DNA of 63,666 bases, filler included, from Octopus bimaculoides (GCF_001194135.2; 6 parts of 6 records of this genome joined end to end with filler, not necessarily neighbours in it); one strand, 5' to 3'; shown: positions 204 to 50,554, counted from the whole stretch's first letter. Program-made: numbers and translations. The notes: generated from the letters alone by a model not told the origin.

Positions 204-300
204 AGTATAAAGAATGAGCACTGATACAAACTGGATGATGCTGTAGAGGGCCATGTATTTGAAACAACCAAAAGAGGTGACTAAAGCAGCTCGACCTTCC
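204..300 (-). CDS. ATP13A3: P5B ATPase exon ([32 protein letters not shown]), last exon in window
   Basis: ccag acceptor and GTGAGT donor; 97 nt, phase 2 to 0; matches remembered ATP13A [23 protein letters not shown]. Confidence 0.93.
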
Positions 301-684
301 CTGGAATGACATAGATGTTATGGTGATCATAATGGCTTCAAATTTTGGTACAAGGCCAGTAGTTTTTGAGGGGAGGGGGAGAAGTTGATTACATCAATCT
401 GATCGCTTCTTTTTAAGTTCAAATTCTACCAGTCAACAGCCTTTCATTCTTTCAGAGTCAATGAAATAAGCACCAGTCAAGCACTGCAGTTCATGTAATC
501 AACTAGCTCCTCAAAATTTCAGGCCTTGTGTCTATAGTATAAAGAATTATTATTATTATTATCATTCTTCACTAAATGCCTTTTCACAGAAACAGTGTCC
601 AAGACACAACAACTAATATTCAGCCCCATCATAATAACAACACCAAAAGTCTTCAAAATAATAATGAACAACAAAGTAACTTAC

Positions 685-794
685 TTTATCACAGTTACAA
701 CACATTCAATGTTTTGGTTTTTGGAAGTGAAAGGAGCAGCAACTGAAGCTTCAGTCTCTGACAGAGAGATACCAGCATGGGCAGCCTTTAATGC
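685..794 (-). CDS. ATP13A3: P5B ATPase exon ([36 protein letters not shown])
   Basis: tgcag acceptor and GTAAGT donor; 110 nt, phase 0 to 2; ALKxAHxGISLSExEASVAxPFTSK motif. Confidence 0.93.
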
Positions 795-1414
795 CTGCAA
801 ATACACAAAAACAGATGGATTACAATGGCTTCTAACAGAGGTAGAAGGCAACAAGAACAGCTATGACAACAACAACACTTCAGTCACTGAGACTCTATTA
901 TCAGTCCTATCAATAATGACGATAGTAAAGGTAGACAAACATTTAGAACACTGATTGAACCAGTCCTTCTCAAGAGATTAGAGACCTGGACCTTATCGGC
1001 TTTCTTAGAAAACAACTAGATGAGCATCATTATCATCGTCTTCATCATTATCATCAAACAAGGCTGTTCATTTCCAGTCTTCTATAAAAAAACATGTCTG
1101 ACCACAGAGAAATATTACTTTGATTGGAAACAGGTGAGGGTTGGCAACAAGGTGGGCATCTGACTGCAGAAAATCTGTCTCAACCATCTAGCTTTTACAA
1201 GCAGTGAAAAGTGGATGTTAAATGATGATGTTGGTACCATTCCTGAGATTTTTCAGACATGACCACTGGAGTGAGGGTGAGATAGTGTTGAATGCTAATT
1301 CTCGTTTGACTAGACTGAATTAATTGATATTAGTAAAAATGGTTGATTAACATTTTATTCCATCTTTCTATTGGATTCCTGTAAAAAATAAAATGTAGAA
1401 TGTTCAAGACTTAC

Positions 1415-1457
1415 CTCACAATCATTAGCACCATCACCACAGAAACCAGTTCCATAC
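1415..1457 (-). CDS. ATP13A3: P5B ATPase exon with hinge motif (YGTGFCGDGANDCE)
   Basis: ctatag acceptor and GTAAGT donor; 43 nt, phase 2 to 0; GDGAND P-domain motif. Confidence 0.92.
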
Positions 1458-1589
1458 CTATAGGAGGAATATCAACGAAAATATTTAAATGAGCACCATC
1501 ATGTAGCTTATTACTGCTATTAATAATAGTAATGTTATGGGCATTAACAGAAGTATTAGTCTAATAATAATAATTATTATTATTTATTA

Positions 1590-2180
1590 TTATTATCCTT
1601 TCTATTACAAGCATAAGAGGTGAAATTTTGGAGAAGGGAGTGAGTGAATTACATTGACCCCAGTGCTTAACTGGTACTTACTGTATCAACTCCAAAAGGA
1701 TGAAAGGAAAAGTCAACCTTGATGGCATTTGAACTCAGAATGTACAGCTGGAAAAATGCTGTTTAGTAGTTTGTCCAAAAAGCTACCTATTCTGAAAGCT
1801 TGGTGCCTTTCAAATTTTGGCATAAAACCAGGAGTTTTATGAGGAGGGGACAGTCAATTACATTGGTCCTAGTACACAATTGGTATTCTATTTTATCAAC
1901 TACAAAAGGATGGAAAGCAAAGTTGACCTCAGTGGGATTTGAACTCAGAACATGAAGTGCCTGAAGAAATGCTGTTAAGCATTTTGTCCGGCATGCTAAC
2001 AATTCTGCCAACTCGCTGGCTTAAAATGATAATTTCTAAAATAGGCACAAGGCCAGAAATTGGGGAAAGCAGGAAAACAGTTGAGCAAATTAAGCCCAGT
2101 ACTTGACAGGGGCTTTATTTTATCGATTCTCAAAGGCTGAAGGGAAAAGCTGACCTCAGTAAAATTTGAACTTAGAACAC
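1590..2180 (-). mobile_element. Three tandem copies of an abundant tRNA-derived SINE with (ATT)n tail
   Basis: Repeated reverse complement of the gagctggcagaa...gagttcaaatt head, ctttgcctttcatcc core and ccttgtgcc tail. More copies near 5452-5860, 6985-7210, 8580-9200, 12100-12540, 16140-16610, 19430-19640 and 21700-21905. Confidence 0.85.
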
Positions 2181-2672
2181 AAATGTGATGACACCTGACA
2201 GGTGTCGCTAAATAAACAACTGAGAAAAATGGTGTCACAGTCAAAATGGTGAAGCAATAAATCCCCAAATCAAGTTTCATATCTTAACAGAAATACATTA
2301 TGTATTTCTATGATATTCGAAGGGTTTTGTCATGTGCCAGCACAAATGGTCATAACTAAATATGACCAGATTTTTAAATTGTCAACTTTGAGGTGCTTAG
2401 ATATCTAACTTATGACATGTCTTACAAGTAGGATCAAAGCAATTACTATAGTATAATACAATTATGATAAATCTTTAAAATTTGAATCAGAAATTATGAG
2501 AAAACGATGCACATATTACAGAATTATGATCATACCATTTGATGTTAATTATGTATCTTATAAACAGAAACAAAGTAATTCAATCCTTTTTTGTTACTAT
2601 ACATTTTTTTTTTAAATTTACAATTTAATTTTTAAAATAATGAAGTATTTAATAAAATAACTATTGTCATTA

Positions 2673-2882
2673 TTAGCCATTTCGTTACCATATTTCTGTC
2701 AAAATACACTGCTATTGTATCAATTACTTTTGAAAATAATGAAGAATTTACTACTAAAACAATTGTCATTATTAAACTGGTGTTTGAAACATAAATTAAC
2801 ATGAAATTTTGACAGAAGGTTTTAACTTAAATCGCATTAAAACAAGAAGTGGTGTCGGTGGGATTGGTATCAAAAGAGTTAA
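2673..2882. mobile_element. piggyBac-like MITE, copy 1
   Basis: Similar throughout to 4174-4401; ends aaaagagttaa. Confidence 0.55.
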
Positions 2883-2948
2883 AGAAAGTAAGAGAAGGGT
2901 TTGAGAAACATTCAAGACCATTTTCAAAGGAATTTAACAGAAACTCAC

Positions 2949-3028
2949 TCCAGTTCTTGAAATTTCTCCACTAATTGAGCCTTTTGATCTGGAGACATTC
3001 TGGCAAATATTGTTCCTCTTTCGCAGAC
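2949..3028 (-). CDS. ATP13A3: P5B ATPase exon (VCERGTIFARMSPDQKAQLVEKFQEL)
   Basis: ctaaag acceptor and GTGAGT donor; 80 nt, phase 0 to 2; FARMxPDQK motif. Confidence 0.93.
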
Positions 3029-3890
3029 CTTTAGAAAGAAATTCAAATTGGAATTGGTCACAGTATAGGTACACCAATTGTACACACACATAATCAACTA
3101 AATGTCTCCTACTATAGCCCCAAACCAACCAAAGCCTTGTGAGTGAATTTAGTACACAGAAATTGGAAGAAACTGTCATATATGTATGTGTGTTTGTTCA
3201 CATTTGTGCTCACTTCTACAAAATATGCAACCTATCAGCAGTGATGTTGTCATTTCTACTATGGAAAAGAATGGACAACTGTACTCAATACTTTATTCAC
3301 AAACCTTCATTTACCAACCAACCAACCACAACTACTGGTTCACAGGTACCCAATCATCAAACTTCACTCACCAACATAACACAACCATTGAATCACAGAC
3401 ACAATATCCTCTTTCAATTGTCTCTCTCTCTCTCTCTCTCTCTCTGTCCTGTGTGAGGAGACAGTGTTGCTGTGATCTAGTAGCTGTAGCGAGTTGGTGA
3501 GAAAGTTTGTGCGTCTGTGAAGTAGTGAGCATAGCAGATTGGCAAGTGAAGATTTGAGTAAAGACACTATGTCTATGAGCCAAACATTACAGCATCTTTG
3601 CGAGTGAAGGCATCAGGCAGTGGCTTCACTCACAAAGCGGTGGACTGGTGAGTAATGGTTTGAATGATAAGTTTGTAGGTCTGCGATTCAGTGGCTGTGA
3701 TATGTTTATAATTGAAGATTTATCAATCAGTCAGATGTTCATTTATGATAAGACAAGAAGAGATGACCTCTCAGACAGATGCCAGGAACTCAGTACTCAA
3801 TATATGTATCAACAGAACCACTGAAATATCATGAGCCACGTAGTCAGGCAAGGGTGCCAAGTTCAAAATTGATAAATATGATTATTTTAC

Positions 3891-3998
3891 CTGGTTTAGT
3901 AACTGGGGGAAGTATGTCTTCAGCACAGAAAAGGCTTTACCAGACACGGCAAAGTGATACCTTCTACTGTCAGATTCACATCGAATGGAATGGTAACC
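3891..3998 (-). CDS. ATP13A3: P5B ATPase exon (GYHSIRCESDSRRYHFAVSGKAFSVLKTYFPQLLNQ)
   Basis: tgcag acceptor and GTAAAA donor; 108 nt, phase 0 to 0; RYHFAxxGKxF motif. Confidence 0.9.
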
Positions 3999-4173
3999 CT
4001 GCAATATAAACAACAAATGTAATGAGGATTCAGAAGAAAGAGGAGAAATGAAAAGCAAGCAATAATAGTTAACTTTGCAGCATTGAGAGATGACAGTGAC
4101 CTTAAAGTTTTGGCTCACCAGCCTTCATCAGATTGTCCAACAAAGCCAGCAGGTTGAGACTTTGAACAAGTAC

Positions 4174-4401
4174 TTAACCCTTGTGTTACCATATTTCTGA
4201 TGAAACCCACTGTCTTCATTTCAATTAACTTTGAAAATAATGAAGAATTCAATGAAACATCTGCCATTATTAAGCCAGCATTTGGAATAGAATTTAAAAT
4301 GAAATTTTGATGGAAAGTGTTAATTTAGATCATTTTAAGGAAAGAAGTTTTTATCATAGTAGCAGAAGAAACCTTGGGTGGTTTGGTGTCAAAAGAGTTA
4401 A
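4174..4401. mobile_element. piggyBac-like MITE, copy 2
   Basis: TTAA-CCCTT...AAGAG-TTAA ends with TTAA on both sides. Confidence 0.6.
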
Positions 4402-7400
4402 GTAAGATATGATATGATGTGATATGACAGTGATAAAACATGAAATGATTTTACATCAGTGTGCTATGGACACAGTGATATAAATGCTGTCAGTAAACTG
4501 TTGACTTGCTGCTATAAAATATTTCATTCCGAACCTAACTAGAACACAATCAAAATTATATGGTTAAGATTATATCTTGAATTAGTAAAGCAACCGCAAT
4601 CAAGTTAAAAACATTAAAAAAGAAGACCAAGTTCAATCCCAGCTATTGCTGACAATTTGAAAATATCATATAAATATCAATGTGTACTAACATCTCTACA
4701 TTTATTTATCACATGAAAGTGAAATAAAGTCTACTTTATGATGAAGCTATCCAGGAGTTTTTAGAGCAACAAACTATACTTCACTCCAAAGTGTCCTTGA
4801 GTTATATAGCCATGACTAGATTTGAACCCAGCACAGTAGGTGAATAATGTAATATCCATTACACAATGCCATTGTTACATATCCTTACAACAGTAAGTTA
4901 ATTCTATGTAGTACTTATTTACTGCCAGGTAAACTATCAACACATGGAACCTATTTATGACCAGGTGGACAGCACTTTCTCATGGTACCTGTTTACAGCT
5001 AGTTTCTCAGGGTAGCTTTTCACAGTTAAGTAGACTCTCATGGTACCTATTTGCAGTTAAGTGGATTACATCTTTTCATGATATTGAAGTTAGTTACAGC
5101 AAGGTGAAGTGTGCACTGTAGTGATATCTATTTACAGCTAGATGGACAGTGTGTCCCTATGGTCCCCTACAGTATGCAGAGTGAGATTGAACCTGCTTTG
5201 CTAGTTTTAAATGGTTAACTTCTGAACATGGTCTACTGTTTATCTAATGTAAGGCAGACATGTTCTGAAGCTGAACAAAGTTATAATGTCAGTTAGTAAA
5301 TAAAAGAAAAAGAAATATTAAAGTTTTTTATATATANNNNNNNNNNNNNNNNNNNNNNNNNNNNNNNNNNNNNNNNNNNNNNNNNNNNNNNNNNNNNNNN
5401 NNNNNNNNNNNNNNNNNNNNNNNNNNNNNNNNNNNNNNNNNNNNNNNNNNNTAACGTTGACCTCAACAGTATTTGAACTCAGGACATAAAAAGCTAAAAG
5501 AAATGCCACGAAGCATTTTGTCCAGTGTGGGAAAAATTCTACCAGTTTGTCAACATAATAATAATAATCCTTTCTACTATAGGTACAAGGACTGAAATTT
5601 TGGGAGGGAGGGGGAGGGGGCTAATCAATTACATCAATCCCAGTGCTCAACCCCCAACAAGATGAAAGGATAACGTTGACCTCAACAGTATTTGAACTCA
5701 GGACATAAAAAGCTAAAAGAAATGCCACGAAGCATTTTGTCCAGTGTGGGAAAAATTCTACCAGTTTGTCAACATAATAATAATAATCCTTTCTACTATA
5801 GACACAAGGCCTGAAATTCTGGTGGGATGGGTCTAGTTGATTACATTGACCCCAGTGTTTTGTTTTTTTGTGTTGTATGGCATGATACATTGCTGATGAA
5901 TCAAGGAACTTTAAAGGTTCAAAAATAGCCACAAGGAATTCATACAAAACTATGGAAAAAAAATAACTTGATTAAAAAGTTTCTGAAAGAAAGAAAGCAA
6001 GGCAGTTATTTTCAATACATGTAGAAAATATTAGAAAAAAACATTTTCATATACACACACACATGCACACACACACATACATAAATACACACATACATAC
6101 ATACATACATACATATTGGAGCCTTGAATCTATGCTAGAGTCCGGCTCTTTCTCTATTGACAAGAAATACAGAAATGAAACTGATTGATAACATACATAC
6201 ATACACACACACATTTAAATATGTAAACATACATACTCGCATAAACACACATGCATGTACACATACATTTATAGAAAATTTCGACAATTTCTAGCAAAAT
6301 GCTACAAAAGCATGCAAAGTATTTGAACCATGCCCGTAGATGCCGAAACCAAAAACTAAATAAACAAACACATCAAATAAAATAATGATAATAAAAAAAT
6401 GTTAATAATATTATTATTATTAATAAGAAGGCAACAAGCTGGTAGAATCATGACTGTGCCACAGAAAATGCTTAGCAATATTTCTTCCAGGTCTTTATTT
6501 TCAGAGTTCAAATTCTGTTGATGCCAACATTGCCTTTGAGTGATATAATTAGTTTACCTGCTCCCTTCAAAATTGCTGGCTTGTGCTGAAATCAGACAAA
6601 AAGGTGCCCAGGCTGGTGACATGTTAAAAGCACCTGTGTTGGTAACATGTTAATGGCAGCCATGCTGGTGACACATAAAAGACACTATGGAGTGGTTGGC
6701 ATTAGGAAGGGCATCCAGCCATAGAAACCAAACCAAGGCAGATGGGAGCCTGGTATAGCTCTCAAGCTTACCAGCTCTATCCAACCATCTAACCCATGCG
6801 AGCACCAAAAACAGACACTAATTGAAGTTGATGATGGTGATGAATAATGTTAATATCAAAAGTCTTGTGTCACCCTGACACACTCAAAATGGTGTATTTT
6901 ATGTGCCACCTGCACAGGAGCCAGTCCAGCGGCACTGGCAACGATCTCACTCGAACGGTGCGCTTAGTGCTCCACTGGTACAGGTAATAATCCTTTCTAC
7001 TATAGGCACAAGGCCTGGATTTTTGTGGGGAGGGGGACAATCAATCATACCGACCCTAGTACTTGACTGGTTGGTACTTAATTTATTGATCTGAAAGGAT
7101 GAAAGGCAAAGCTGACATCAGTGGAATTTGAACTCAGAACATAGCAACAGAAGAAATACTGCTAAGCATTTCGCTCAGCATGCTAACAATTCTGCCAGCT
7201 TGCCACCTTGATAATGATAATAACAAAATAATGAAAATAAACACGAAATTAACAAAAAATATACACTAAATGAAAAAAGAAATCAATCAAAATCAAACAA
7301 AAACATATAAAAGGAAGAAAAAAAACTATACAAAAATCTTTAAAAAAAAAAATGCCAAGTATGCAGTCAGTGCTAGAAGGTAGAGAAAGATCACCCACCT

Positions 7401-7989
7401 GTTCTTGGGTTTCATTAAACAGAAGAAGAGGACAATTCTGAAAAACACAAAGCCAAGGAGGATGTTTTCTTAACATGCTGCATATCCACTCTTCCCATGG
7501 ACCTGGGGTGGATAAGGGTGGAGCAGAGGCGAGAGAGAGAGAGAAGAAATAGGGGAATTGGTGTCGTCGTTTTAGCCCCAAAAACAGTCGTGACCAGGTG
7601 GAAGTCTGATCAAAGACGTTCCAGCCATGACCTTTTCATCTTTTATTCAATGTATTTAAGACTACATTATCTAAACGGTTTATCAATACTAATTATTCCT
7701 AATTATTTATTAATGCTAAATAGTTACTATTAGTGGCTATAATTTGTATGTTGTTTAACCCCAGGTAGAGTCCTGATCAAGCAAAACTGATCAAAGATGT
7801 ACCAGCTACACCCATTTCATCTTTTATTTGATGTATTTACAACTACATTCTTTAATATAGAGTTATTAACACTAATTATTACTAATTACTTCTTACTACT
7901 CATTAGTATTAGTAGCACATATAATATATAGCATCACATTATAGACACACACACACACATTATATACACACACGCACATATATTATATA

Positions 7990-8300
7990 GCATCACTATC
8001 ATCTGCATTCCATGCTGACACGGGTTGAGCAGTTTGACAAGATCTAAGAGTTCAAGGGCTAAATCGTGCTTTATTGTCTGCTTTAGCATGGTTTCTATGG
8101 CTGGATGCCTATCAATCATCATTTAACATCCACTTTCCATGCTAGCATGGGTTGGATGATTTGACTGGGGACTGGTGAAACCAGATGGCTACACCAGACT
8201 CCAATCTGATCTGGCAGAGTTTCTACAGCTGAATGCCCTTCCTAACGCCAACCACTCCAAGAGTGTAGTGGGTGCTTTTTACGTGCCACCAGCACAAGGG
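7990..8300 (-). mobile_element. RTE LINE 3-prime UTR fragment(s)
   Basis: Reverse complement of the tail ...ccaacccatgctagcatggaaag...gttaaatgatgat seen at 23400-23480. Related pieces near 6600-6980, 10870-10935, 11790-11960, 19680-20060 and 36870-37080. Confidence 0.75.
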
Positions 8301-9846
8301 CCAGTCCGGCAGTATATATATAAAATACAAAAATGGGACAAGAACGCAAAACATCCAGACAGACAATACAAAGAAAACAAGGATGGGTCATTTGAAGTTT
8401 TCTTTCCTCAGTCAAGTTCCAGATTATCTTTGCAATTTCGGCTGGTATACTCGAGGATTGCTCCAATCTGGCCAGCCCCAAGGAAAAACTAAGCTAAGAG
8501 CATTAGATTCCTTGGAAGAAAGCAGCAAATGTATACAAAAACAAGGACGGAAAAAAATGAAAGGTGAAGAAATTCTCAGTGGAGTTTGAACTTAGAATGT
8601 GAGATGGATGAAATACAAATGATCCTACCAGCTCACCGACTTTCTACTAGAGTCATAAGGCCTGGAATTTTGGGAAAGCAGGTAAGTTGATGACATTGAC
8701 CCCAGTACTCAGCTGGTACTTAATTACCAACCCCAAAAAAGATGAACAGTAAAGTCAACCTCAGCAGAATTTGAACCTAGAATGTAAAGAATCAGATGAA
8801 ATGCCACAAAGCATTTTGGTCGGCTTGATGCTTAATAATAATAGTAATATCAATAATTCCTTCTACTATAGGCACAAGGCTAAAAGTTTTAAGGAGAGGG
8901 TGCTAGTCAATTACTTGGACACCCCAGTGCTCAAATGATACTTATTTTATCAACCTTAAAGGATGAATGACAAAGTCAACTTTGGTAACATTTGAACTAA
9001 AACCATAAAACTGGAAAACATGTCACCAAGCATTCTATCCAATATGTTAATTATTCTCCTAGCTTACTGCCATAATTAATAATATTTGCTTCACATTTTG
9101 GCAGAAAGGACAGCACTTTAAAAGAAGAGGGTAATTCAATTACATCAACCCCAGTGTTCAAGTGGTACTTATTTTATTGACCCTGAAATAATAACAATAA
9201 TAAACTTTTAGAAATCGATTTCTTTCTTGGGACCCAAGGACAAAAAGAAATCAATGCAAAGCAGAGAAACAATCAGCGAAAATGGAATAAATTGAAGACA
9301 TACAGCTACAAGACTGATGTGGGGGAAGGAAAAAAATTGAAAATCTTCATACAGAGAAACAGAGTGGGTTGAGGGGAAACAAAGAGCATAGGTAATGAAG
9401 GTACACAGTGAGTAAAAGAGGCTGGGTTGGTAAAAGAGGCTGGGTTGGTAAAAGAGGCTGGCTCTTGGATGGAAAAAGGCAAGTATAGACAATGAAGAGA
9501 ATGGGGATGCGGAGAGTAAAAAATACAGAATAGATGGAGATATAAAGAGGGTATATAGTTAAAGTGGAGTATGCAGAGAGAAAGATATGATGGACAGAGG
9601 GATACAAAGAAAATAGAGTCAATGAGGGAATGCAAAAAGTAAAAGAAAGGACAAGCAGATGAAAGAAGGAGTACAGCTGATGAAATAAAATGCAGAGAAA
9701 AACAGGAGTAAAATAATTGCACAGAATATTAATGTGAAACAAATGGTACATTGTATGGGTGCAGTTCATGTTTGTGTGTGTATGTGGTGTATATGTATAT
9801 CTGTGTGTGAGTGTATGTGTCTATATATATTGGTATGCGTAGTTAC

Positions 9847-10019
9847 CTCTTGATCAGATTCACTAAGAGAGTCATCTGTGACGGACTCAGATTGTTCCCA
9901 ATGAATCTGAGCTTCCTGGCCATCTTCTGGAGGTGAGGCATTAACGATGATCACATTTTGTTTTGGCTTCACCATTCCACAGTTCCTAGCAACACTGACA
10001 GCTGTCAGAATCATATCTC
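9847..10019 (-). CDS. ATP13A3: P5B ATPase exon (GDMILTAVSVARNCGMVKPKQNVIIVNASPPEDGQEAQIHWEQ...SDQE)
   Basis: tttcag acceptor and GTAACT donor; 173 nt, phase 1 to 0; completes the TGD motif; LTAVSVARxCGM. Confidence 0.92.
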
Positions 10020-10069
10020 CTGAAATATTTAGAAACATATGTATACATGCATAAATACATATACATACA

Positions 10070-10105
<36 letters not shown>

Positions 10106-10160
10106 TATACATACACATGAACATACACTCAAACACATGTGTGTGAGTGTATTTACACAC

Positions 10161-10199
<39 letters not shown>

Positions 10200-10200
10200 C

Positions 10201-10283
<83 letters not shown>

Positions 10284-10505
10284 TATGCACATATACTTAG
10301 ATGAACTCACACACACACACACAGATAAGTATCCTGTCTAAGTTGACTGGCGCTTGCCAACAAACAGAACACAAAGTTCTAGTCAACTTGATATTCATAC
10401 TAAATTTGACTCTGATAAAGAGAGAAAAGTCAAATTTATTGTGAACATGAACACCACCACCACAACAACAACAACAGCAACAGCAGCAGTAATAATAAAT
10501 CTTAC

Positions 10506-10630
10506 CTGTCACCATCACTGAACGAATATTTGCAGCTTGTAAAGTCTTGATGACTGGTGCCGACTCTGGTTTTAAGGTATTTTTCATTATAAGCAATCCC
10601 AGGAAGTTTAAATTATGTTCCACTTTTTCA
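10506..10630 (-). CDS. ATP13A3: P5B ATPase exon (EKVEHNLNFLGLLIMKNTLKPESAPVIKTLQAANIRSVMVT)
   Basis: tttcag acceptor and GTAAG donor; 125 nt, phase 2 to 1; FLGLxIMxNxLK and ANIRxVMVTG motifs. Confidence 0.93.
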
Positions 10631-10948
10631 CTGAAAATGGTCAATGAAACAAAACATAAATTTGAAAAAAAAGAAAAGATCAATTCTTGCTAATAATCAT
10701 TAATCAATAGTCATTAATCAGAAACTTCACATAATGATATGACACACTTAACCGTAAATAGAGAGGTACCAAATATGGTTCTCTTTAGTGGCTTGCTGGC
10801 TAATTTTCTCACAGACAGTGCTCCAGCATGGCCCAGCCTTAGAGCTGAGACATATAAAAGAATAATCCAAAACGAACTAACTACACCATTTTGAGCGTGG
10901 CCGTTGCCAGTACCACCTGATTGGCCTTCAATGAGACAACATACTAAC

Positions 10949-11069
10949 CGGTTTATCCGCTGTGCCTGGTGCCAGGTGAGTTTAGGGTCCAGTTCCTTCC
11001 AGGATAAGGCAAGAACACGGAACCCTTGCACTGTGTATTTGTGGAGAATATCAGAGAAGTCTGCTGGAA
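10949..11069 (-). CDS. ATP13A3: P5B ATPase exon (PADFSDILHKYTVQGFRVLALSWKELDPKLTWHQAQRINR)
   Basis: ccaaag acceptor and GTTAGT donor; 121 nt, phase 1 to 2; QGFRVxAL and KLTWH motifs. Confidence 0.93.
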
Positions 11070-12688
11070 CTTTGGAGAAGAAAAGAAAAGGAAAAAGATA
11101 TAAGAAAACAATAGGGTAAATGAATAAAGGGTAGAAGATTGTATGTTGGTTTCTCATCCTCCTTCTTATCATCACCACCATCATCATCATCAACATAAAC
11201 AACATCAACTTCATTATCACCACAAACATCATCATCAATATGCCTTCCACCACTACCACTACCATTCTCACTTCTATCATCATCATCATCATCACCACCA
11301 CCATCTCAACCACCATTTGTCATCATCATCAAAACTACCACCATAATGATCATGAACAGCCTACAACCGCAACTCTCACCATCTCTCCACCACCACTACC
11401 ATCATCACCAGCATAAACATTGTCCTCATTATCACCATCAATATTAACCACCTCTACACTATCGTCATCAATACCACCATCATCAACGCTGCCACCACCA
11501 CTGCTGCTGCCACCACCACTGCTGCATCATCGTCATCATCATCATCAGTTCAATGCAAAACTTAAAAAGCACTTCATAAAACGGAGGCAAAAGGAAAGAG
11601 AAATATGAAATCCACCACCACCACCACCAACACCACCACCAACACCACCACCAACACCAACATCAACACCAACAACAACAACATCCTTTAATCCATTAAA
11701 ATTATTTGTGAAACACAATAACCATTAAGGTCTTAATTCCATCAAAGAAACATGGAATTCAATAATAGCATTGTCATCATCATCATCATTTAATGTCCCC
11801 TTTTCTATGCTTGCATGGGTCAGACAGAATTTGTTGAGGCAGACTGTTCACAGCCAGATGCTCTCCCTGTCATCAACCCTCACCTATTTCTAAGCACAGT
11901 AATATTTTGTGATGGAAGACAGGAAACAAACAACACCACTTGTATGAGAGTGATGCTCATTTACAATCATCACACAATGTCAAGACAAGGGAACTCACAG
12001 AGACACACACAAATACATATACATAATCACATGTATATTATATACATATATTGACAGGTTTCTTTCAGTTTTAAGCTAGCAAATCCACTCAGAAGGCCAG
12101 CAATTTTAAAGAAGTGGCTAAGTCAATCACATTTATCCCCAGTGTTCCACTGACACTTATTTTTCTGAACACGAAATGATAATATTAATGGTTTCAAATT
12201 TTGGCACAAAGCCAGCAGTTTTGAAGGAGAGGATAAGTTGATTATATCAACCCCAGTGCTCAAGTAGTACCTATTTTACTGATCCCAAAAGACAGATGAA
12301 ATACTGCTAAGCATTTTGCCCAGTGTGCTAACACTTCTGCCAGCTCACTGCCTTCATAATAACAACAATAACACTTTCTACTACAGGTACAAGGCCAAAA
12401 ATTTTAGAGGAAGGTTATAGTCAATCACTTTGACTCCCATCCTCAACTGGTTCTTAGTTTATCAATCTTAAAAGGACGAAAGGCAAAGTCAACCTCAGCA
12501 ACATTTGAACTGAGAACATAAAGCTGGAAGAAATGCCACCAAGCTTGGAACTATAACAGAAGACATTTACCCGAGGTGTCACACAGTGAGACTGAACCAA
12601 AGACTACATGATTGAGAAGCAAGTTTCTTAACCACACAGCCACACCTCCATCATCAAAGAGAAAAAAAAAACATTAACAAGTACGTAC

Positions 12689-12842
12689 TACTATCTGGAT
12701 TACACAGTGATGCAATCTTCTCTGGAGCCCCTTTCGAATAAATGTCCATGTGATTGGTACCAAGTTTGCGAACAATCACACTCATACGCTGAAGACTTGA
12801 GGTAAAAGTGAACTGTCGCACAATTCCGACTTCAAGGGATGT
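12689..12842 (-). CDS. ATP13A3: P5B ATPase N-domain exon ([51 protein letters not shown]); absent from ORF track
   Basis: ccatag acceptor and GTACGT donor; 154 nt, phase 0 to 1; IVRQFxFxSxLQRMSV and KGAPE motifs. Confidence 0.93.
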
Positions 12843-14779
12843 CTATGGCACATAAACAGAGATGGAGAAGAAAAAGGGAATGTATTCTTCAAAGACTAAA
12901 AAAAACATTCTTCAGAAATTTACCATTCTTCAATGGAAATTTACAATTTGATCAAATTTAGGTAAATTTACAATTTGATTATAATCAAAATTACAATTTA
13001 CAAGTATTCAGTGAAATTTATATAATTTAAAATATTATGTTAAATTCAAGATTTGATATTTCGTTGAAGTTTATAATTTGTCATAATATTTAAAATATTT
13101 GATTAGATTGAAACTGATATTTAATTAATACATAATTTAGAAAACTTTGTTAAATTTATAATTTAAAATATTTAGTTAACATTACAATTTAATATATTGT
13201 TCAAAGTCAAGGAAGTACAAAATTTCTCTTTAATGTTTTTTTTTATTTATTCTCGATCTTTTTAAAATTATAGATAATGTTAAAGAATTGTTATGCTTTC
13301 CAAAACTATTTAGACCAAAGTTTTGCAAAATTTTATCAATGAGTTTGAACACCATTTCTTTAAAAAATTTTAAGTAATTCTATAGAAAACTTTCACTTGG
13401 AAAATTATTTTCTACAGAGTTACCAAACAGAAAGTAGGTTTAAAGTTCACTCCAGCCAGTAAACACCACCTTTTCAGATCAATTTCTGTCTTCTCCATTG
13501 TTAACTTCACACAAACAAACAAACAATATACATTCTCTTAAAAAAACATTTTTTAAATTCAAAACTTCTGGGTTGGAGTTTTTTAGGGAGCAAAACTGAT
13601 AGGATGGCAGTGGTGTAAAATTTTCAGTAAACAACATTTTAGAAACATAATATTTGTTATCAAGTCCATTAAGAAAACCATTTTCAAACATTCAAGCAGT
13701 TTAAACTGATGGGAGCAAAATAGAAGGGTCTCTATCAGGGTGGTGGGTGTAAGCTTAGCAGTGGGGAATATAGGTTGGTCAGTACAGGGGTGGGGATTGT
13801 AGCTTAGCTGGGGAAAAAATAGATGGTTTGGTGTGTAGCTTGGGGAACAATATAGGAGGATCTCTACGTGGAAGTGTGGCTTAGCAGAGGGGCAATATAG
13901 ATAGTCAGTATAGGGAGGTTGGTATGTAGCTTAGGGGATCGATATAGGGATGTTGATGTGAGATTATTAAAACAAAATTCAAATGAAGAAACATTTAGAA
14001 ACTGTGTGTGTGTGTTTGTGTGTGTATGTAAGAGTGTATGTGTGAGAGTGCATGCAAGAGAGTGTATGTGAGAAAGTGTGAGTGAGTGTGCATGTGTGAG
14101 TATGTGCATGTACATGAGTGCATGTGTGTGTTTGTATGTGTGTAGGTGAGTGGGTGCTTGAGTGTGTGTTTGTGTACTTGTATATGTCTATTTTGAGAGT
14201 GTAGTAGATTCTGGTCTGAGTCTGGATCAGAATGAACGATCTGCTTTGCATACTTGACAGCCAGGTGGACAGTTCTCTGAGAATGAACTAGACTTATTTG
14301 ATATCTTTTTCCTCAAAACTAGATGAAAGGATTGGTGGACTGTGGTCTAAGTCTACAGCCAGATGATCTGGTATGTATATTTGAGAGCAAGGTGGACTAT
14401 GATCTCTATTTAAAGCTAAATGATCTGGTATCTATACATCACATCTAAGTGGACTGCAGTCTGAAAATGAATGCCTAAAGATTGGATGACTATTTTCATC
14501 AAAATATACTTCAAAATATATAATGTTCAGTATTCTAAGTCTTATAAAGGTTTTTCTATTTGCAGATGGAATATCCTGCCAGTAGTGACGTCTACACATA
14601 CAAAAAAAAACAAAGGGACTATCTGGTGAGAATGTTCTGGTGCCAACAGATCGGTAGTTGAAATATAACCTGTAATGGATGAAAGAAGTGGTAGAAGAAA
14701 AAACAAAAAAAATAAATGAAGACAGATTTGACAATCTCTGTAGATTATCACTTCGATAAAAGTATGAGTAATATTTCAC

Positions 14780-14878
14780 CTGATCCACATTTGTAAAACT
14801 AGCACTGGAACAAGGCTTAACAACAGTTGGTGTAAAACTGTCGAATTTCCGTGTCTCACTGCCGGGCTCCTGAATCAC
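14780..14878 (-). CDS. ATP13A3: P5B ATPase N-domain insert exon, copy B (VIQEPGSETRKFDSFTPTVVKPCSSASFTNVDQ)
   Basis: tgcag acceptor and GTGAAA donor; 99 nt, phase 0 to 0; homologous to copy A and to remembered ATP13A3 ILEE...MPTVVRP. Confidence 0.82.
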
Positions 14879-15970
14879 CTGCAATCAATATGGGAGTGGC
14901 TGATGAATGTAAACTATCGCATAAACTTCTTGGAAGGAAACATGGAAAGCTCAAAATGGATCAAATGGATCTCTTGCAGAGATCTTTGTTGCTTTCTTTA
15001 GTTTTGCTCTTTGATTTTTGTTTAGTTTTGTTTTGTGACTGCTTTGTAATTAGGACAAAAAAAAAGGCAAGAAAATGAAGCAAGAGCGCTAAATTGGTAA
15101 AAAAAAAAAAATGCCATGATAAAAGAGGGCAGAAGAAATCGAGAGGAGATTACAAGGAAAATAAAAAGCAATATTCAAGGTGAAAGCAAAAGCCTGGTAA
15201 ATTAGTTTCAAATTTTGACACAAGGCCAGCAATTTTGGGGTAGGGGTAAGTCAATTACATCAACCCCCAGTGCTCANNNNNNNNNNNNNNNNNNNNNNNN
15301 NNNNNNNNNNNNNNNNNNNNNNNNNNNNNNNNNNNNNNNNNNNNNNNNNNNNNNNNNNNNNNNNNNNNNNNNNNNNNNNNNNNNNNNNNNNNNNNNNNNN
15401 NNNNNNNNNNNNNNNNNNNNNNNNNNNNNNNNNNNNNNNNNNNNNNNNNNNNNNNNNNNNNNNNNNNNNNNNNNNNNNNNNNNNNNNNNNNNNNNNNNNN
15501 NNNNNNNNNNNNNNNNNNNNNNNNNNNNNNNNNNNNNNNNNNNNNNNNNNNNNNNNNNNNNNNNNNNNNNNNNNNNNNNNNNNNNNNNNNNNNNNNNNNN
15601 NNNNNNNNNNNNNNNNNNNNNNNNNNNNNNNNNNNNNNNNNNNNNNNNNNNNNNNNNNNNNNNNNNNNNNNNNNNNNNNNNNNNNNNNNNNNNNNNNNNN
15701 NNNNNNNNNNNATATATATATATATGTATGTATACAAAATGGAATTAAGGGTCAGACATTGTGATATGTAAAAAGCAGAAAGTTTAAAAACTGACACAGA
15801 AGATAATAATAATAATAATAATAATAATAATGTGACTCATAGCCTGATGTTAGGAACTTTTTCCAACAGTGTAATCTGTTGTGCTTATATGAAATCATCA
15901 TCATCCCAGTCATAAAAACCAACAGTCATAAGTCTCTCCAGTTGTAACACCTCCCCGTTGTAAGTCCCTC

Positions 15971-16028
15971 CAGTCATAAGACTACCCAGTCATAAGACTA
16001 CCCAGTCATAAGACTACCCAGTCATAAG
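15971..16028. repeat. 16-nt tandem repeat (cagtcataagactacc) x3.6 with degenerate flanking units
   Basis: Direct reading. Confidence 0.85.
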
Positions 16029-16337
16029 TATAAGATTCTTTCGACATAAGACCCCAGAAACATAAACCTCCCATCTGGATGTAATCCCCTCTAGTCCTAT
16101 GTCTGTCCAGACTTTGATGATGATGGTAAGAATAATATTTCTAATAAAGGTGCAAGGCCTGAAATTTGGGGGTGGGGGCTAGTCAATTATATCGAGCGCC
16201 AGTGCATAACTGGTACTTATTTTAACAATCTCAAGAGAATGAAAGATTAAGTCGACTTTGGCAGAATTTGAACTCAGAATGTAAAGAAGATCTAAATGCC
16301 AGAACTGGCATGCTAACAATTCTGCCAGTTCACTAAC

Positions 16338-16386
<49 letters not shown>

Positions 16387-16610
16387 TCATCATCATCATT
16401 TCTACTAAAGGCACAAGATTTGAAATTTTGGGAGAGGGGACTAGTCGACCACATCGACCCCAGTACTCAACCGGTACTAACTTTATCAACCTCAAAAGGA
16501 TGAAAGGCAAAGATGACCTTGGCAGAATTTGAACTCAAAATGTAAAGATGAACTAAATGCTGCTAAGCATTTTGCCCAGTGTGTTAATAATTCTGCTAGC
16601 TACCACCTTC

Positions 16611-16656
<46 letters not shown>

Positions 16657-16812
16657 TGATAATAATATTCAGGCATTATTATTATTTATCTTCTGTCAGT
16701 TTCATGCAAACAAAGGGTTGAAAAATAAGCTTAAAAAAATTTGATAATTAAAAAAAAATTGAAATAAAAATGAAACACAGCAGGAAAGGGGGGGTCTGTA
16801 TTTATTTCCTAC

Positions 16813-17004
16813 CACGGAATCAGAATCACCGAGATGCAAGAATGAACCATTAGAAGTGGCAAATAAGGCGTCGTTATTCTCTGCAGAAGTAGTGGTAAGG
16901 TCAGAAGTAGAGGCAGTAGCAGTGATTGAGGTGCTGCGCGGACGCACCACCGTCGGCATGAGACTATCAAAGCGTGTTGTGTCTTTACCAGGTTCGTCCA
17001 GTAC
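16813..17004 (-). CDS. ATP13A3: P5B ATPase N-domain insert exon, copy A (VLDEPGKDTTRFDSLMPTVVRPRST...GDSDSV)
   Basis: pyrimidine tract, gagcag acceptor and GTAGGA donor; 192 nt, phase 0 to 0; MPTVVRP motif. Confidence 0.88.
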
Positions 17005-17344
17005 CTGCTCAACGGAGAAGAGAAAAGAGGAGAAGAGAAAGAAGAGAGAAATGTATACACATTTATTCACAGAGAGGAAATGGTCACTGTATGATGGTGG
17101 AATATGGTATCAGTAGACACTAACTTCTGGTAATAACAATAATTACAACAGTAACAATAAGAACAGTGGTAAAAATAAAAATAATACAAAGAAGAATGGT
17201 AGAGAGAAATGGGTTCCTGGAAACTGAAGACAGACACAAGAATTGGAAGGAGATGAAAGAAGAGAGAAGACCAGAAAATGGGAATGAGAATAAGAAAATA
17301 AAAAGATGAGAGAAAACAATGAGAGGAAATGAGAGCAAAAAGCA

Positions 17345-17355
17345 GAGACAGGGAA

Positions 17356-17412
<57 letters not shown>

Positions 17413-17660
17413 AAGAGAGAGAGAGAAAGGGAAGGAGAGAGAGAGAGAAAGGGAAGGAGAGAGAGAGAGGGAGGGAGAGAGAGAGGGAGGGAGAGAGNNN
17501 NNNNNNNNNNNNNNNNNNNNNNNNNNNNNNNNNNNNNNNNNNNNNNNNNNNNNNNNNNNNAGAGAGAGAGAGAAAGAGAGAGAGAGAAAGGGAAGGAGAG
17601 AGAGAGAGGGAGGGAGAGAGAGAGGGAGGGAGAGAGAGGGAGGGAGAGAGAGAGAGGCAG
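17345..17660. repeat. (GA)n/(GGGA)n microsatellite spanning a gap
   Basis: Direct reading. Confidence 0.95.
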
Positions 17661-19784
17661 AAAAGAATGAAAAAGGAAGAAAAAGAAAACAGGAAAAAGT
17701 GAGAGAAAGAAAAGAAACAGAAAGGAAGAGAAGAAAAGCAAGATGATGACAACAAAAAAAAAATGGCAGAGGAAGAAAGCAACCAAAGATCAAAAGAAAG
17801 AAATAAAGCAAAAGAAGAGGAAGAGGGATACAGATGAAGATGAAAAATAAAATGACAGAAGATAGCAGGAAAATCCCAACAAAACTAAAACAAAGAATGA
17901 AAAAAAGGCAAAAATGAAAAAAAAAAATACAAATGAAACATCAGCAGCATCATAATCACTATCACAAGACTTGCCTGACTCAAATAAATGTAAACCTAAC
18001 ACCAAAACCTGTAAATACAACAGAGCCATACATACAGTGTAATGTGTGTGTTTGCACATATCTACATGCATACTTACATACATACATATATACATACATA
18101 TATACATGCATGTATGTATGTAGAAGGTATAAGGATTGAAGAATTGTATCAAGAACACAATGAAGGCAGTCAAAACCTTGGAAAATGGATAGGAAACCAT
18201 TATTCCAGATGGTTCGTCACTGAGGGAAGCAGTGCCTCATGTGAAGGAGAACTCTAACAAAATTGCATCAAGCATGAACAGTTGAAGAAAGACCTTGGTA
18301 AGAGTCTTGGTGTACATTTTCCTGAGTATTTTGGAGCACAGCCTGAATGAGTGTGGGCATGTCTGTCTAAGTGAGGCAGGCCTCAGAAGTATAAAAGGAA
18401 CACCCCCCACCCACCCCCTACACACAGGGCATCTTTATTTACAAGGAGTACAGAAAAGAATGCACCAGGAGGCAGAGTGAAATGTCATATGAAGGTTCAC
18501 AAAAGTAATATTCTAACACCTACTACAAGAGGTGCCCATCATTAGCACATCTGTGCAAAAGAATGTAGGTCACTAGCAGGGCTGAAAAACCACATCTGTG
18601 TTGTTCATATTTAAGAGAAAAATCAACCAATGACATTTTTCAAAACATGAGTTTCAAAACATCATATATATAAAAATCTGTGTATATCATGTAGCTCTAG
18701 TTTACTCAGATGTAAATGAGCACCAATCTGGTGCCTGCCCTCTCTCCTTCCATGTACTGGTGCTGCCCTCTTTCCCTTCATGTACTGGTGCTGCCTTCAC
18801 TCCTATGTACAGTAATGCAACTAAATAGCACAAAACATTTTTGTCTGAGATGCTACAACAATAACTACAACAAGGATTTTCGACTCAAGATGCATCATTT
18901 GGAGTGACGACACAATGCAAGAGCAAGCAGGCATGCAAAACCTTGTCACTCTTAATTTTAAACAAGACTCTAAGACTCAAGTCATTACGATAAAAATCAA
19001 GATGCAACAAAATTCCAGAGCTGCAATACAGGAACTCCTGTCATTGACTGACAAGCAATAGGAGATATTATAATAATAATAATAATAATGATAATAATAA
19101 TATGTAAAGAACTAGAAACAATCCTACACGGCTCTAAGATTTTAGCCAATTCAACAGGTTGATGATGATGGTAGAGAAGGTGGTGGTGATTATGATGATG
19201 GTAGTGGTTTTGATGATGATGATATCTAAATTTACCAAAGCCCACAAAATTAGGAGCATGTCTGTAGTAGTGTGAAATTTGAAATGACCTCAGTATATCA
19301 CTGGGATATGGTTTATTGACAAAAGACAAATTTGACATCAGCAAGAATTGCTCTCAAAATGTAGAAACATCAACCACAAAACATATTTAGACCATCTCCA
19401 CTGTCTTAGAACAACTATTAATAATAATAATAATAACTGTGTTATAGGCACAAGGGCTGAAATTTTGGGGCAGGGGTCTAGTTGATTATAATGACCCCTA
19501 ATGTTCAACTGGTACTCATACTGTTGACCTTGAAAAGATGAAAGGCAAATAAGAATGGTTTGATTATAGTTAAAAGACTTCGATCTCAAACTCTTGACTG
19601 GTACATTGGTTTATTGATCCTAGAAGGATGAAAGGCAAAGTTGAGGACCTGAGTAGAATATAAAGGGACATCACAACTGTTCAACCCATGCCAGCATGGA
19701 AAGCGGACGTTAAACAACGATGATGATGATGATGATGATCACTCAATAATACAATTTTATGTTTGGCCAATACAAAGCGCATAT

Positions 19785-49771: not shown

Positions 49772-50554
49772 TATATAAAATCATTTCAAATTTAGCGATG
49801 TTGGACAAAAGTTGTAAAGTTTATATGCTAGAAATAAAGGAGAATGGGGACTAAACAGTGTATAGAAGTGACCTTAAAAAATACAAACTTTCTCTTTGAG
49901 TTGAGGTTAAGATTTAGGGGAATAACGATAACTGAAATGCAGAGTGGAAAGGAAAACTGAATATATTGAGGCAACAAAGGGCAATGTTAGCTAAAGCAAG
50001 TTTTTCAACTCACTATATTACATGTAATAAACTACCATATACGAATTAAGACAACATCGTTACTTTAGTAAAAAAGTTTTTCTTAATTTTCCTTCCTTTA
50101 TCTTTGAACACATTAAAACAAACAGATGAAGTAGGAAGAAGACACGACCTATACAATGTAGATGTTGTTTCTGTTAATAATACTTACATATTAATATAGA
50201 GCCAATGACGAAGATGTCACGATAGATTCAAGTAGTCACAACTCAGACTGGACAATGACAGCTTTGACATTTTACAACAAACCTTCATTTAGATTTTTCA
50301 CATCGACATCGTAAAGAATGTTGTATAGATTTCTTTCCACAGTTAATTAGCAATCAACACTAATTGGATCATCTTAATTGTTTATCAACAACAGCAGAGA
50401 ATCAACAGAATTATTTTGGAAGTGTTAAGTCTTTAAATACATCCACGTTTCCTTCAAATAGATTTTATCTTCTAAAAGACGGAGATTTGATTCATTCTTA
50501 ATGACTGCTTGAAATTCTAATGTTATCCATCGGGTAGAAATATTTCTCTGTAAA

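What the first reader, a model, noticed from the sequence alone, without database searches (positions are those of the whole stretch)
14780..17004. Tandemly duplicated N-domain exon in the P5B ATPase: candidate mutually exclusive exons
Seen: two phase 0-0 exons 1.8 kb apart start at the same homologous position. A (64 aa) is VLDEPGKDTTRFDSLMPTVVRPRS and B (33 aa) is VIQEPGSETRKFDSFTPTVVKPCS. Both have intact splice sites and no stops, and either joins in frame to exon 12689-12842. Known: ATP13A3-type polyamine pumps carry this MPTVVRP segment once, before the IVRQF/KGAPE nucleotide-binding strands. Inference: the divergent but open copies look maintained. They could be mutually exclusive exons giving long and short N-domain inserts, or both could be included as a repeat. 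I do not recall either being described for a mollusc P5B pump.
Basis: partly seen in the sequence, partly recalled or inferred. Interest (0 to 1): 0.75.

Follow-up and report, generated by a model that had tools for sequence, protein, structure and literature searches.

The report
Duplicated alternative exons in octopus polyamine pump
Two neighbouring, related exons of an octopus ATP13A3-like polyamine pump are both real coding exons that can be used together or singly rather than strictly one-or-the-other, a pattern already in sister-species annotations and apparently inherited from a very old duplication.

Summary
On the minus strand, exon A (17004-16813, 64 aa) and exon B (14878-14780, 33 aa) are homologous, phase 0-0 and AG/GT-bounded, and either joins in frame to exon C (12842-12689). 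The N gap (15277-15711) lies inside the A-B intron and begins in a dispersed repeat. A gap-free Argonauta locus has the same order A, B, C.

Both exons are under purifying selection. Synonymous sites are near or at saturation while amino acids are conserved.

The mutually-exclusive reading is only partly right. Annotated proteins of Octopus sinensis (RefSeq X1-X5) and O. vulgaris (annotation built with PacBio full-length cDNA reads (Iso-Seq) and the PASA transcript-assembly pipeline) include A+B, A-only and B-only forms. Nothing in the sequence would enforce exclusivity. They are best read as two independent in-frame cassette exons.

B is the canonical exon. It is the only one in transcripts of a non-octopod coleoid, and it carries the widespread PC-x-x-x-F tail. 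A is an extra copy with an S/T-rich tail.

The same two-exon arrangement, with the same phases, occurs in a chiton, nemerteans, decapod crustaceans and a horseshoe crab. An oyster and Lingula lack it. The duplication therefore probably predates the mollusc-nemertean split.

No paper found describes it. This is a new example of a known kind, of moderate interest.

The parts
16813..17004 (-). Exon A (copy 1): 192 nt, 64 aa, phase 0-0. The head VLDEPGKDTTRFDSLMPTVVRPRS is followed by a 40-aa S/T-rich tail ending in the conserved block NNDALFATSNGSFLHLGDSDSV.
   Evidence: Sequence and splice sites. The peptide is 64/64 identical in O. vulgaris and O. sinensis proteins. Octopus versus Argonauta: head pS 0.556 and pN 0.02; tail block pS 0.42 and pN 0.16.
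14780..14878 (-). Exon B (copy 2, the canonical form): 99 nt, 33 aa, phase 0-0, VIQEPGSETRKFDSFTPTVVKPCSSASFTNVDQ.
   Evidence: It is 32/33 identical in O. vulgaris and O. sinensis. Versus Argonauta, pS is 0.756 and pN 0.103. It is the only form at this position in six listed RNA-seq contig proteins of a non-octopod coleoid. In the AlphaFold2 model of the B-only isoform it forms strand 564-567, a flexible loop, strand 582-586 and a flexible tail.
14879..16812 (-). Intron between A and B, 1934 nt as assembled. It contains the N gap 15277-15711, two or three copies of a dispersed repeat, ATT microsatellites and a 16-nt tandem repeat.
   Evidence: It shows no collinear similarity to the 4.2-kb Argonauta intron beyond low complexity.
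12843..14779 (-). Intron between B and the next exon (1937 nt).
   Evidence: The open frame that runs 150 codons from exon B into this intron is not conserved past the donor site.
12689..12842 (-). Exon C (constitutive): [51 protein letters not shown]. These are the nucleotide-binding strands and the KGAPE motif of the N domain. It accepts A or B in phase 0.
17005..17497 (-). Pyrimidine-rich (CT) tract in the intron just upstream of exon A, continuing beyond the small gap to about 17731. It is a possible splicing-regulator platform; that role is inferred only.
   Evidence: The 500 nt upstream of A are 82% pyrimidine, against 44-59% for ten other exons. A GA/CT repeat family lies at 17304-17497. 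A CT-rich tract also precedes exon A in Argonauta.
7399..7437 (-). Exon G: a separate 13-aa alternative cassette exon (NCPLLLFNETQEQ) of the same gene.
204..11069 (-). Remaining downstream exons of the same gene in the window: D 11069-10949, E 10630-10506, F 10019-9847, H 3998-3891, I 3028-2949, J 1457-1415 (GDGANDC), K 794-685, L 301 to about 204.
   Evidence: The window encodes residues 573-1019 of O. sinensis isoform X1.

Best explanation
A and B are two ancient tandem copies of one exon of an ATP13A3-like P5B polyamine-pump gene.

Each copy encodes the same piece of the nucleotide-binding (N) domain. That piece runs from the residue after the helix ending ...LNW, through an E-P-G turn, an F-D loop and the strand P-T-V-V-x-P, into a flexible tail. 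The tail leads to the strand EVGIVRQF, which carries the adenine-binding Phe.

Both exons are phase 0-0 and both lengths are multiples of three. The spliceosome can therefore include either or both without changing the frame. They behave as two independent cassette exons giving A+B, A-only and B-only pumps.

B is the canonical short form. A is the extra copy: its head keeps every invariant residue, but its tail has become a long S/T-rich, probably disordered, loop. In A+B proteins one copy presumably fills the structural position and the rest forms an enlarged surface loop of about 70 residues.

Shown: the homology, the splice sites, the linkage, purifying selection on both copies, the existence of all three annotated forms, and the presence of the pair in other phyla.

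Inferred: which isoform dominates in which tissue, how the choice is regulated (weak donor sites, and the CT-rich tract before A), and that the isoforms differ in ATP handling or in regulation of the pump.
For: Homology is far above chance and there are exactly two copies.

The similarity is at protein level only, with synonymous sites scrambled (pS 0.95 and pN 0.34 between A and B).

Purifying selection acts on both copies between Octopus and Argonauta. B has pS 0.756 and pN 0.103. The A head has pS 0.556 and pN 0.02. The constitutive exon C has pS 0.70 and pN 0.06.

Both copies keep all residues of this exon that are invariant in 41 homologues from cnidarians to chordates (E4, P17, V20, P22) and the near-invariant T18.

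Argonauta has the same order and phases without any gap: A is 282 nt, B is 99 nt.

Annotated isoforms in O. sinensis are X1-X3 = A+B, X4 = A only and X5 = B only. O. vulgaris has 3 A+B, 2 A-only and 2 B-only. The O. vulgaris alternative forms were added by PASA from Iso-Seq and RNA-seq assemblies (PMC10700109).

B-type is the only form in six listed RNA-seq contig proteins of a coleoid that is sister to the octopods.

The same pair of separate phase 0-0 exons at the same gene position occurs in the chiton Liolophura, the nemertean Lineus and the shrimp Penaeus. Annotated or transcript-assembled forms with both, copy 1 only, copy 2 only, and in one lobster neither, are seen.

The nearest solved structures are of human ATP13A2. 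The A head aligns to ...VLAVMRP, and A tail plus B is a 72-aa insertion where ATP13A2 has 9 residues.

The AlphaFold2 model of the B-only isoform gives the head as a strand and both the mid-loop and the tail as pLDDT below 50.
Against: No reads were inspected here. The three octopus forms are known only through two annotation pipelines, so their relative abundances and tissue patterns are unknown. Some combinations could be minor or artefactual.

The window itself joins A and B only across scaffold gaps.

No functional data exist for any isoform.

The two-copy protein could not be modelled, because all octopod A+B proteins exceed the 1200-aa limit.
Confidence: 0.85

Rival explanations
1. Strictly mutually exclusive exons, the reader's main proposal: every mature mRNA carries exactly one of A or B, and the annotated A+B models are artefacts of combining junctions.
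For: The two exons are adjacent, homologous and in the same phase, and A-only and B-only proteins are annotated. A non-octopod coleoid shows only the B type.
Against: A+B is annotated by two independent pipelines in two Octopus species and in Argonauta. Two-copy proteins also come from single RNA-seq contigs in crustaceans (P0302, P0332) and from annotation in a chiton, nemerteans and Limulus. Double inclusion keeps the frame, since the exons are 192 and 99 nt. The intron is 1.9 kb, both exons are GT-AG, and no intronic complementary pairs were found. The exon lengths differ two-fold.
Confidence: 0.06
2. Both exons are essentially constitutive, so the pump normally carries the repeat, and the single-exon forms are rare splicing noise picked up by sensitive annotation.
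For: A+B forms are the most numerous models. RefSeq's X1, and the only Argonauta and chiton models, have both copies.
Against: B-only is the only form in six listed contig proteins of a related coleoid. Copy-2-only isoforms are annotated in Lineus and in many crustaceans, and copy-1-only transcripts exist (P0303, P0298). The donor sites of A and B are at the weak end for this gene, with 5/9 and 6/9 matches to the U1 consensus.
Confidence: 0.07
3. One copy is a dead duplicate or an assembly artefact, for example a misplaced contig from a paralogue.
For: Exon A lies on a 1.8-kb contig between two gaps. Molluscs can have divergent P5B paralogues, as Dreissena P0001 versus P0263 shows.
Against: The same arrangement is present in a gap-free Argonauta locus. 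Both exons appear inside single proteins of two other Octopus assemblies. Both are under purifying selection.
Confidence: 0.02

Closest known systems
Tandem exon duplication-derived alternative exons, such as the set catalogued for human genes in PMC8373072, which includes the P-type pumps ATP2B1-4
   Same: Adjacent homologous exons of the same phase arose by an old duplication, are kept under selection, and give protein isoforms that differ in one structural segment.
   Different: No ATP13A gene is mentioned in that paper's main text (its supplementary tables were not searched). Here the two exons are not a clean substitution: both-included forms are annotated, the lengths differ two-fold, and one copy has gained a long low-complexity tail.
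Classical mutually exclusive exon clusters, either with an enforcing mechanism (docking/selector RNA pairing as in insect Dscam1, steric hindrance, or frame disruption with nonsense-mediated decay) or simple pairs as in tropomyosin. This comparison rests on general knowledge.
   Same: Tandem homologous exons of the same phase, with single-exon isoforms.
   Different: No enforcing feature was found: double inclusion stays in frame, the intron is long, the splice sites are GT-AG, and no complementary boxes were found. A+B products are annotated.
Human ATP13A2 and ATP13A3 (P5B polyamine transporters; solved ATP13A2 structures 7N70, 7M5V, 7VPI, 8IEK)
   Same: Same family and the same N-domain segment. 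The A head aligns to ATP13A2 ...[22 protein letters not shown], and exon C aligns to the strand carrying the adenine-stacking Phe (PMC8564547).
   Different: The human protein has this segment once, with a 9-residue loop. The octopus A+B form inserts 72 residues there.
The same exon pair in other protostomes: Liolophura, Lineus, Tubulanus, Penaeus and other decapods, Limulus
   Same: The upstream exon ends at ...W in phase 0. Copy 1 has a variable low-complexity tail and copy 2 has the canonical tail, both phase 0-0, followed by the (V)PYE(I/V)GIVRQF exon. Both-copy and copy-2-only isoforms are annotated in Lineus and in decapod crustaceans, and copy-1-only forms in decapod crustaceans; the chiton, Tubulanus and Limulus records listed here carry both copies only.
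   Different: Tail length and composition are lineage-specific: 9 aa in Lineus, about 105 aa and P/S-rich in Penaeus, S/T-rich in octopods. Orthology with the arthropod pair is only suggestive.

Membership tests
P5B (ATP13A2/3-like) P-type ATPase | N-domain and hinge motifs of P-type ATPases (KGAPE; GDGANDC) and Pfam Cation_ATPase / Hydrolase domains | tested here: met
   Exon C carries KGAPE and exon J carries GFCGDGANDCE. The window-encoded peptide hits PF13246 and PF00702 above their cut-offs.
P5B (ATP13A2/3-like) P-type ATPase | P5-specific N-terminal domain (PF12409), the DKTGT phosphorylation site and the PPALP motif in M4 | tested here: inconclusive
   These lie outside the window, which starts at residue 573. 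They are present in the near-identical O. sinensis and O. vulgaris orthologues: PF12409 at E 1.3e-24, and CFDKTGTLTEDG and VVPPALPAAMTVG in the sequences.
P5B (ATP13A2/3-like) P-type ATPase | Closest solved relatives are P5B polyamine pumps rather than P5A or other P-type classes | tested here: met
   Human ATP13A2 scores E 4e-55 and yeast/fungal P5B 2e-38, against 2e-25 or weaker for P5A.
Mutually exclusive exon pair | Adjacent homologous exons of the same phase that fit the same flanking exons | tested here: met
Mutually exclusive exon pair | Exactly one of the two is present in every mature transcript | tested here: not met
   A+B proteins are annotated in O. sinensis (X1-X3), O. vulgaris (3 of 7) and Argonauta. 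This rests on annotation; no reads were examined.
Mutually exclusive exon pair | A mechanism that forbids double inclusion or double skipping: frame disruption, an intron too short to splice, incompatible splice-site types, or competing RNA pairing | tested here: not met
   The exons are 192 and 99 nt, both multiples of 3. The intron is 1934 nt. Both exons are GT-AG. There are no inverted repeats beyond microsatellites and no conserved intron blocks versus Argonauta. Short or bulged RNA pairings could have been missed.
Tandem exon duplication-derived alternative cassette exons | Two neighbouring exons descended from one, both kept under purifying selection, each optionally included | tested here: met

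The most novel reading that the evidence does not exclude
The A/B pair is a single, very old alternatively spliced module, at least as old as the mollusc-nemertean ancestor and possibly protostome-wide. It has been kept for more than half a billion years in some lineages (octopods, chitons, nemerteans, perhaps decapod crustaceans and chelicerates) and lost in others (oysters, and probably the gastropods and other bivalves sampled). It lets polyamine pumps switch the N-domain strand next to the adenine pocket and add or remove a long disordered S/T/P-rich loop, giving isoforms with different regulation.
Probability: 0.4. Interest if true: 0.65.

Novelty: new member of a known kind. Interest (0 to 1): 0.45.

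Why it matters
P5B pumps (ATP13A2/3) are the long-sought polyamine transporters and are linked to Parkinsonism and pulmonary hypertension. Little is known about how their cytosolic domains are regulated.

A pair of alternative exons has been preserved under selection across distant animal phyla. It rewrites the strand and loop just before the adenine-binding strand of the N domain. That points to a regulatory hot spot that vertebrate studies would not reveal.

For genome annotation the case is also a warning. Homologous same-phase neighbouring exons need not be mutually exclusive.

For this window specifically, the result is mostly confirmatory, because the isoforms are already in RefSeq and ENA annotation of sister species.

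Tried and rejected
Short composite queries to the protein database returned only targets of 500 aa or less and no cephalopod. Only a full-length query exposed the octopus, Argonauta and other full-length proteins.

Exon C alone was used instead, and that led to the coleoid transcripts.

The Dreissena locus L001 showed a single copy, but it turned out to be a divergent paralogue (P0001 versus P0263). That negative says nothing about the orthologue. Lingula has one copy.

[quoted passage not shown] P0224 and P0238 are not the longest products of their genes, so they are not on record.

The search for conserved intronic elements between Octopus and Argonauta gave only low-complexity matches. The search for inverted repeats or docking-selector candidates gave only microsatellite matches.

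The run accession of the coleoid transcript (SRR24189504) is not in the paper library, so its species is inferred only from a tree.

Literature searches for ATP13A3 or CG32000 with mutually exclusive exons, for octopus mutually exclusive exons, and for P5B splice variants found no description of this pair.

The A+B isoform was not modelled, because all octopod two-copy proteins exceed the 1200-aa limit. A model of a two-copy protein would in any case mostly reflect how single-copy homologues are aligned.

The 150-codon open frame running from exon B into the intron was rejected as coding, because conservation with Argonauta stops at the donor site.

Full report
**What is in the window.**
The gene lies on the minus strand. 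Exon A is 17004-16813 (192 nt, 64 aa). Exon B is 14878-14780 (99 nt, 33 aa). Both are open, begin after AG, end before GT and are phase 0-0. The next exon C (12842-12689, [11 protein letters not shown]...KGAPE...) starts in phase 0.

Ten further exons of the same gene follow down to about position 204. The window encodes residues 573-1019 of the O. sinensis orthologue. The exon that precedes A (...KMFLSLNW) is not in the window.

The window differs from O. vulgaris and O. sinensis at a few residues (for example FDSFT versus FDSFS in B). It therefore comes from another Octopus species.

**Is the similarity real?**
The first 24 residues of A and B score 77 (ungapped BLOSUM62). The next best place in all six frames scores 25-26. 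The best hit in 30 shuffles averages 21.5 +/- 4.1 with a maximum of 30. There are exactly two copies.

At the DNA level the copies are almost randomised: 37/72 identical bases, with nearly all synonymous third positions different (pS 0.95, pN 0.34). No DNA-level direct repeat joins them. This is an old duplication whose protein sequence has been held in place.

**The assembly gap.**
The N run 15277-15711 is inside the A-B intron and touches neither exon, so no frame depends on it. On its low-coordinate side it starts in the middle of a dispersed repeat that is also present twice more in the same intron.

Exon A sits on a 1.8-kb contig with gaps on both sides, so misplacement was a real possibility. 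It is excluded by two results. The Argonauta hians locus (72 kb, no N runs) has the upstream exon ending at 48244, A at 50956-51237 (282 nt), B at 55409-55507 (99 nt) and C from 55973, all AG/GT and phase 0. Proteins from the chromosome-scale O. vulgaris and O. sinensis assemblies contain A followed directly by B.

**Both copies are functional coding sequence.**
Between Octopus and Argonauta, synonymous sites are near or at saturation while replacements are rare.
- B: pS 0.756, pN 0.103.
- A head: pS 0.556, pN 0.02.
- Conserved end of the A tail: pS 0.42, pN 0.16.
- Constitutive exon C: pS 0.70, pN 0.06.

Both copies keep every residue of this exon that is invariant among 41 homologues from corals to amphioxus (E4, P17, V20, P22, plus T18).

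**How the exons are used.**
A full-length search and cluster listings show the annotated forms.
- O. sinensis RefSeq: X1-X3 carry A+B, X4 carries A only, X5 carries B only.
- O. vulgaris: seven isoforms, three A+B, two A only, two B only.
- Argonauta: the one model listed here carries A+B.

The O. vulgaris alternative forms were added by PASA from Iso-Seq and RNA-seq assemblies (PMC10700109), so they are independent of RefSeq.

Six proteins from RNA-seq contigs of the Logan collection of assembled public sequencing runs (P0079, P0219-221, P0223, P0351) have only a B-type exon, VIQEPG(R/E)DTHKFDNFMPTVVNPC.... The P0079 contig is 3945 nt and carries a 1209-aa ORF, so it is spliced mRNA. These proteins come from animals that group as sister to the octopods at 74.6% identity.

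The exons are therefore alternative but not mutually exclusive. Nothing in the sequence would enforce exclusion. Both lengths are multiples of three, the intron is 1.9 kb, both exons are GT-AG, and there are no complementary intronic boxes. There is no conserved intron sequence against Argonauta.

Their donor sites are at the weak end for this gene, with 5/9 and 6/9 matches to the U1 consensus against 5-8 for the others. B has the second-lowest pyrimidine content in the 25 nt before its acceptor among the eleven exons scored. Both features are typical of regulated exons.

**Which copy is the original?**
B has the tail motif P-C-S/T-x-x-S/T-F that single-copy molluscs, annelids and even deuterostomes carry (for example oyster PTVVRPCTKDTF). 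It is also the exon used by the other coleoid. A keeps a conservative head (DTTRFDSLMPTVVRP) but has replaced the tail by an S/T-rich stretch. That stretch is 40 aa in Octopus and 70 aa, with long T runs, in Argonauta.

**The pair is much older than octopods.**
Two-copy proteins are annotated in these taxa:
- the chiton Liolophura sinensis;
- the nemerteans Tubulanus and Lineus (X1 has both copies, X2 has copy 2 only);
- many decapod crustaceans. Penaeus japonicus X1 has both, X5 copy 1 only and X6 copy 2 only. Panulirus X8 has neither. RNA-seq contigs P0302 and P0332 have both, and P0303 has copy 1 only;
- Limulus.

Spiders have copy 1 plus a degenerate copy 2.

In the genomes examined (chiton L005, Lineus L007, Penaeus L006) the copies are separate phase 0-0 exons. 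They sit between the exon ending ...W and the exon starting (V)PYE.GIVRQF, exactly as in the octopus.

Across five lineages, same-copy similarity exceeds cross-copy similarity in 25 of 25 lineage pairs. For chiton versus Lineus, copy 1 to copy 1 is 18/24 and copy 2 to copy 2 is 19/24, against 13/24 across copies. Octopus A is closer to Lineus copy 1 (17/24) than to Octopus B (14/24).

That pattern is what a duplication older than the mollusc-nemertean split predicts. For arthropods the signal is weaker, because copy 2 to copy 2 is not above the cross-copy value. A shared origin with them is only suggestive.

The pair is absent from the oyster locus: a 485-nt intron, one copy, and nothing else in 29 kb. 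It is absent from Lingula. It is also absent from all listed isoforms of abalones, caenogastropods, Mercenaria and Mya.

Caenogastropods instead have other small alternative exons in the same loop. This loop is therefore a recurrent site of splicing variation.

**What it does to the protein (inferred).**
The nearest solved structures are of human ATP13A2. The A head aligns to ...[22 protein letters not shown], and exon C aligns to the strand that carries the adenine-stacking Phe (F630 in PMC8564547). Where ATP13A2 has a 9-residue loop, the A+B form has 72 extra residues.

An AlphaFold2 model of the O. vulgaris B-only isoform was made (mean pLDDT 77, pTM 0.71). It gives exon B as a short strand (564-567), a low-confidence loop (572-578), the strand TVVKP (582-586) and a low-confidence tail (590-596). 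The tail runs into the long strand 602-611 of exon C.

The alternative exons therefore change a strand that lies about 15 residues before the nucleotide-binding strand in the chain (their contact in three dimensions was not examined), and they change the length and composition of a flexible surface loop. In yeast Ypk9 an N-terminal auto-inhibitory tail contacts the N domain and its nucleotide pocket (PMC8233418). A changed N-domain surface could plausibly alter such regulation. This is a hypothesis, not a result.

**Comparison with what is known.**
This is a tandem exon duplication giving alternative exons, a known kind of event (PMC8373072). No ATP13A gene is mentioned in the main text of that human catalogue. 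No paper found describes this pair. The isoforms themselves are already public as database records.

**Verdict.**
Mutual exclusivity is not supported, while alternative use and the 'repeat' option are. The new points are the depth of conservation and the fact that all inclusion combinations occur. Interest is moderate.

Noticed in passing
window 7399-7437 (-): A separate 13-aa alternative cassette exon (NCPLLLFNETQEQ, phase 0-0). It is present in O. sinensis X1 and in the non-octopod coleoid transcripts, and skipped in O. sinensis X3 and several O. vulgaris isoforms. An 8-aa cassette (YSKVDDHK) outside the window is also alternative.
   Followed up: partly
window 17005-17497 and 17561-17731 (-): A long CT-rich (GA on the plus strand) low-complexity tract lies directly upstream of exon A. 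The 500 nt upstream are 82% pyrimidine, against 44-59% for other exons of the gene. A CT-rich tract also precedes exon A in Argonauta (L004 about 50520-50950). It may be a binding platform for pyrimidine-tract proteins, or it may just be a microsatellite.
   Followed up: partly
window 15195-15276, 16135-16225, 16395-16480; further copies e.g. 12130-12275, 21740-21900: Many same-orientation copies of a dispersed short repeat (SINE-like, ...GCACTGGGGTCGATGTAATTGACT...CCCAAAATTTC...), each followed by ATT/ATC microsatellites. The assembly gap at 15277 starts inside one copy.
   Followed up: partly
window 14435-14884 (-): The reading frame of exon B stays open for 150 codons into the downstream intron. 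Conservation with Argonauta stops at the donor site, so this looks like chance rather than a longer exon.
   Followed up: yes
window 15906-16029; 13993-14178: A 16-nt tandem repeat (about 8 units, CCAGTCATAAGACTAC-like) in the A-B intron and a TG-rich microsatellite in the B-C intron.
   Followed up: no
proteins P0240, P0453-P0459 (Pomacea), P0261 and P0472-P0478 (Littorina), P0249 and P0479-P0482 (Babylonia): Caenogastropods have only the canonical exon but several other small alternative inserts at the same loop, between ...DTFLGEE and HPFEVGIIRQF (for example DEVYASNEIFESTLQGKWDK and DEEKKV). This N-domain loop is a repeated target of alternative splicing.
   Followed up: no
proteins P0282, P0284, P0311, P0334 versus P0293 (spiders): Spiders carry a copy-1-type exon followed by a degenerate second copy (LVQEPGLDESALSFPLSTTKDCSILDEM) that has lost the F-D...P-T-V-V core and is missing in Argiope isoform X3.
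   Followed up: no
L001 (Dreissena polymorpha) and P0263: Dreissena has at least two P5B paralogues. The fragmentary model P0001 (locus L001) is a divergent one (ELKEPGMDESSNFDKICPTIVYP), distinct from the ATP13A3-like orthologue P0263.
   Followed up: no
Argonauta L004 50956-51237: Exon A of Argonauta has expanded to 94 aa through runs of Thr (TTTTTTTT, TTTTS, TTTTT). Its first 23 and last 23 residues stay close to Octopus, so the tail evolves by repeat expansion between two conserved ends.
   Followed up: partly
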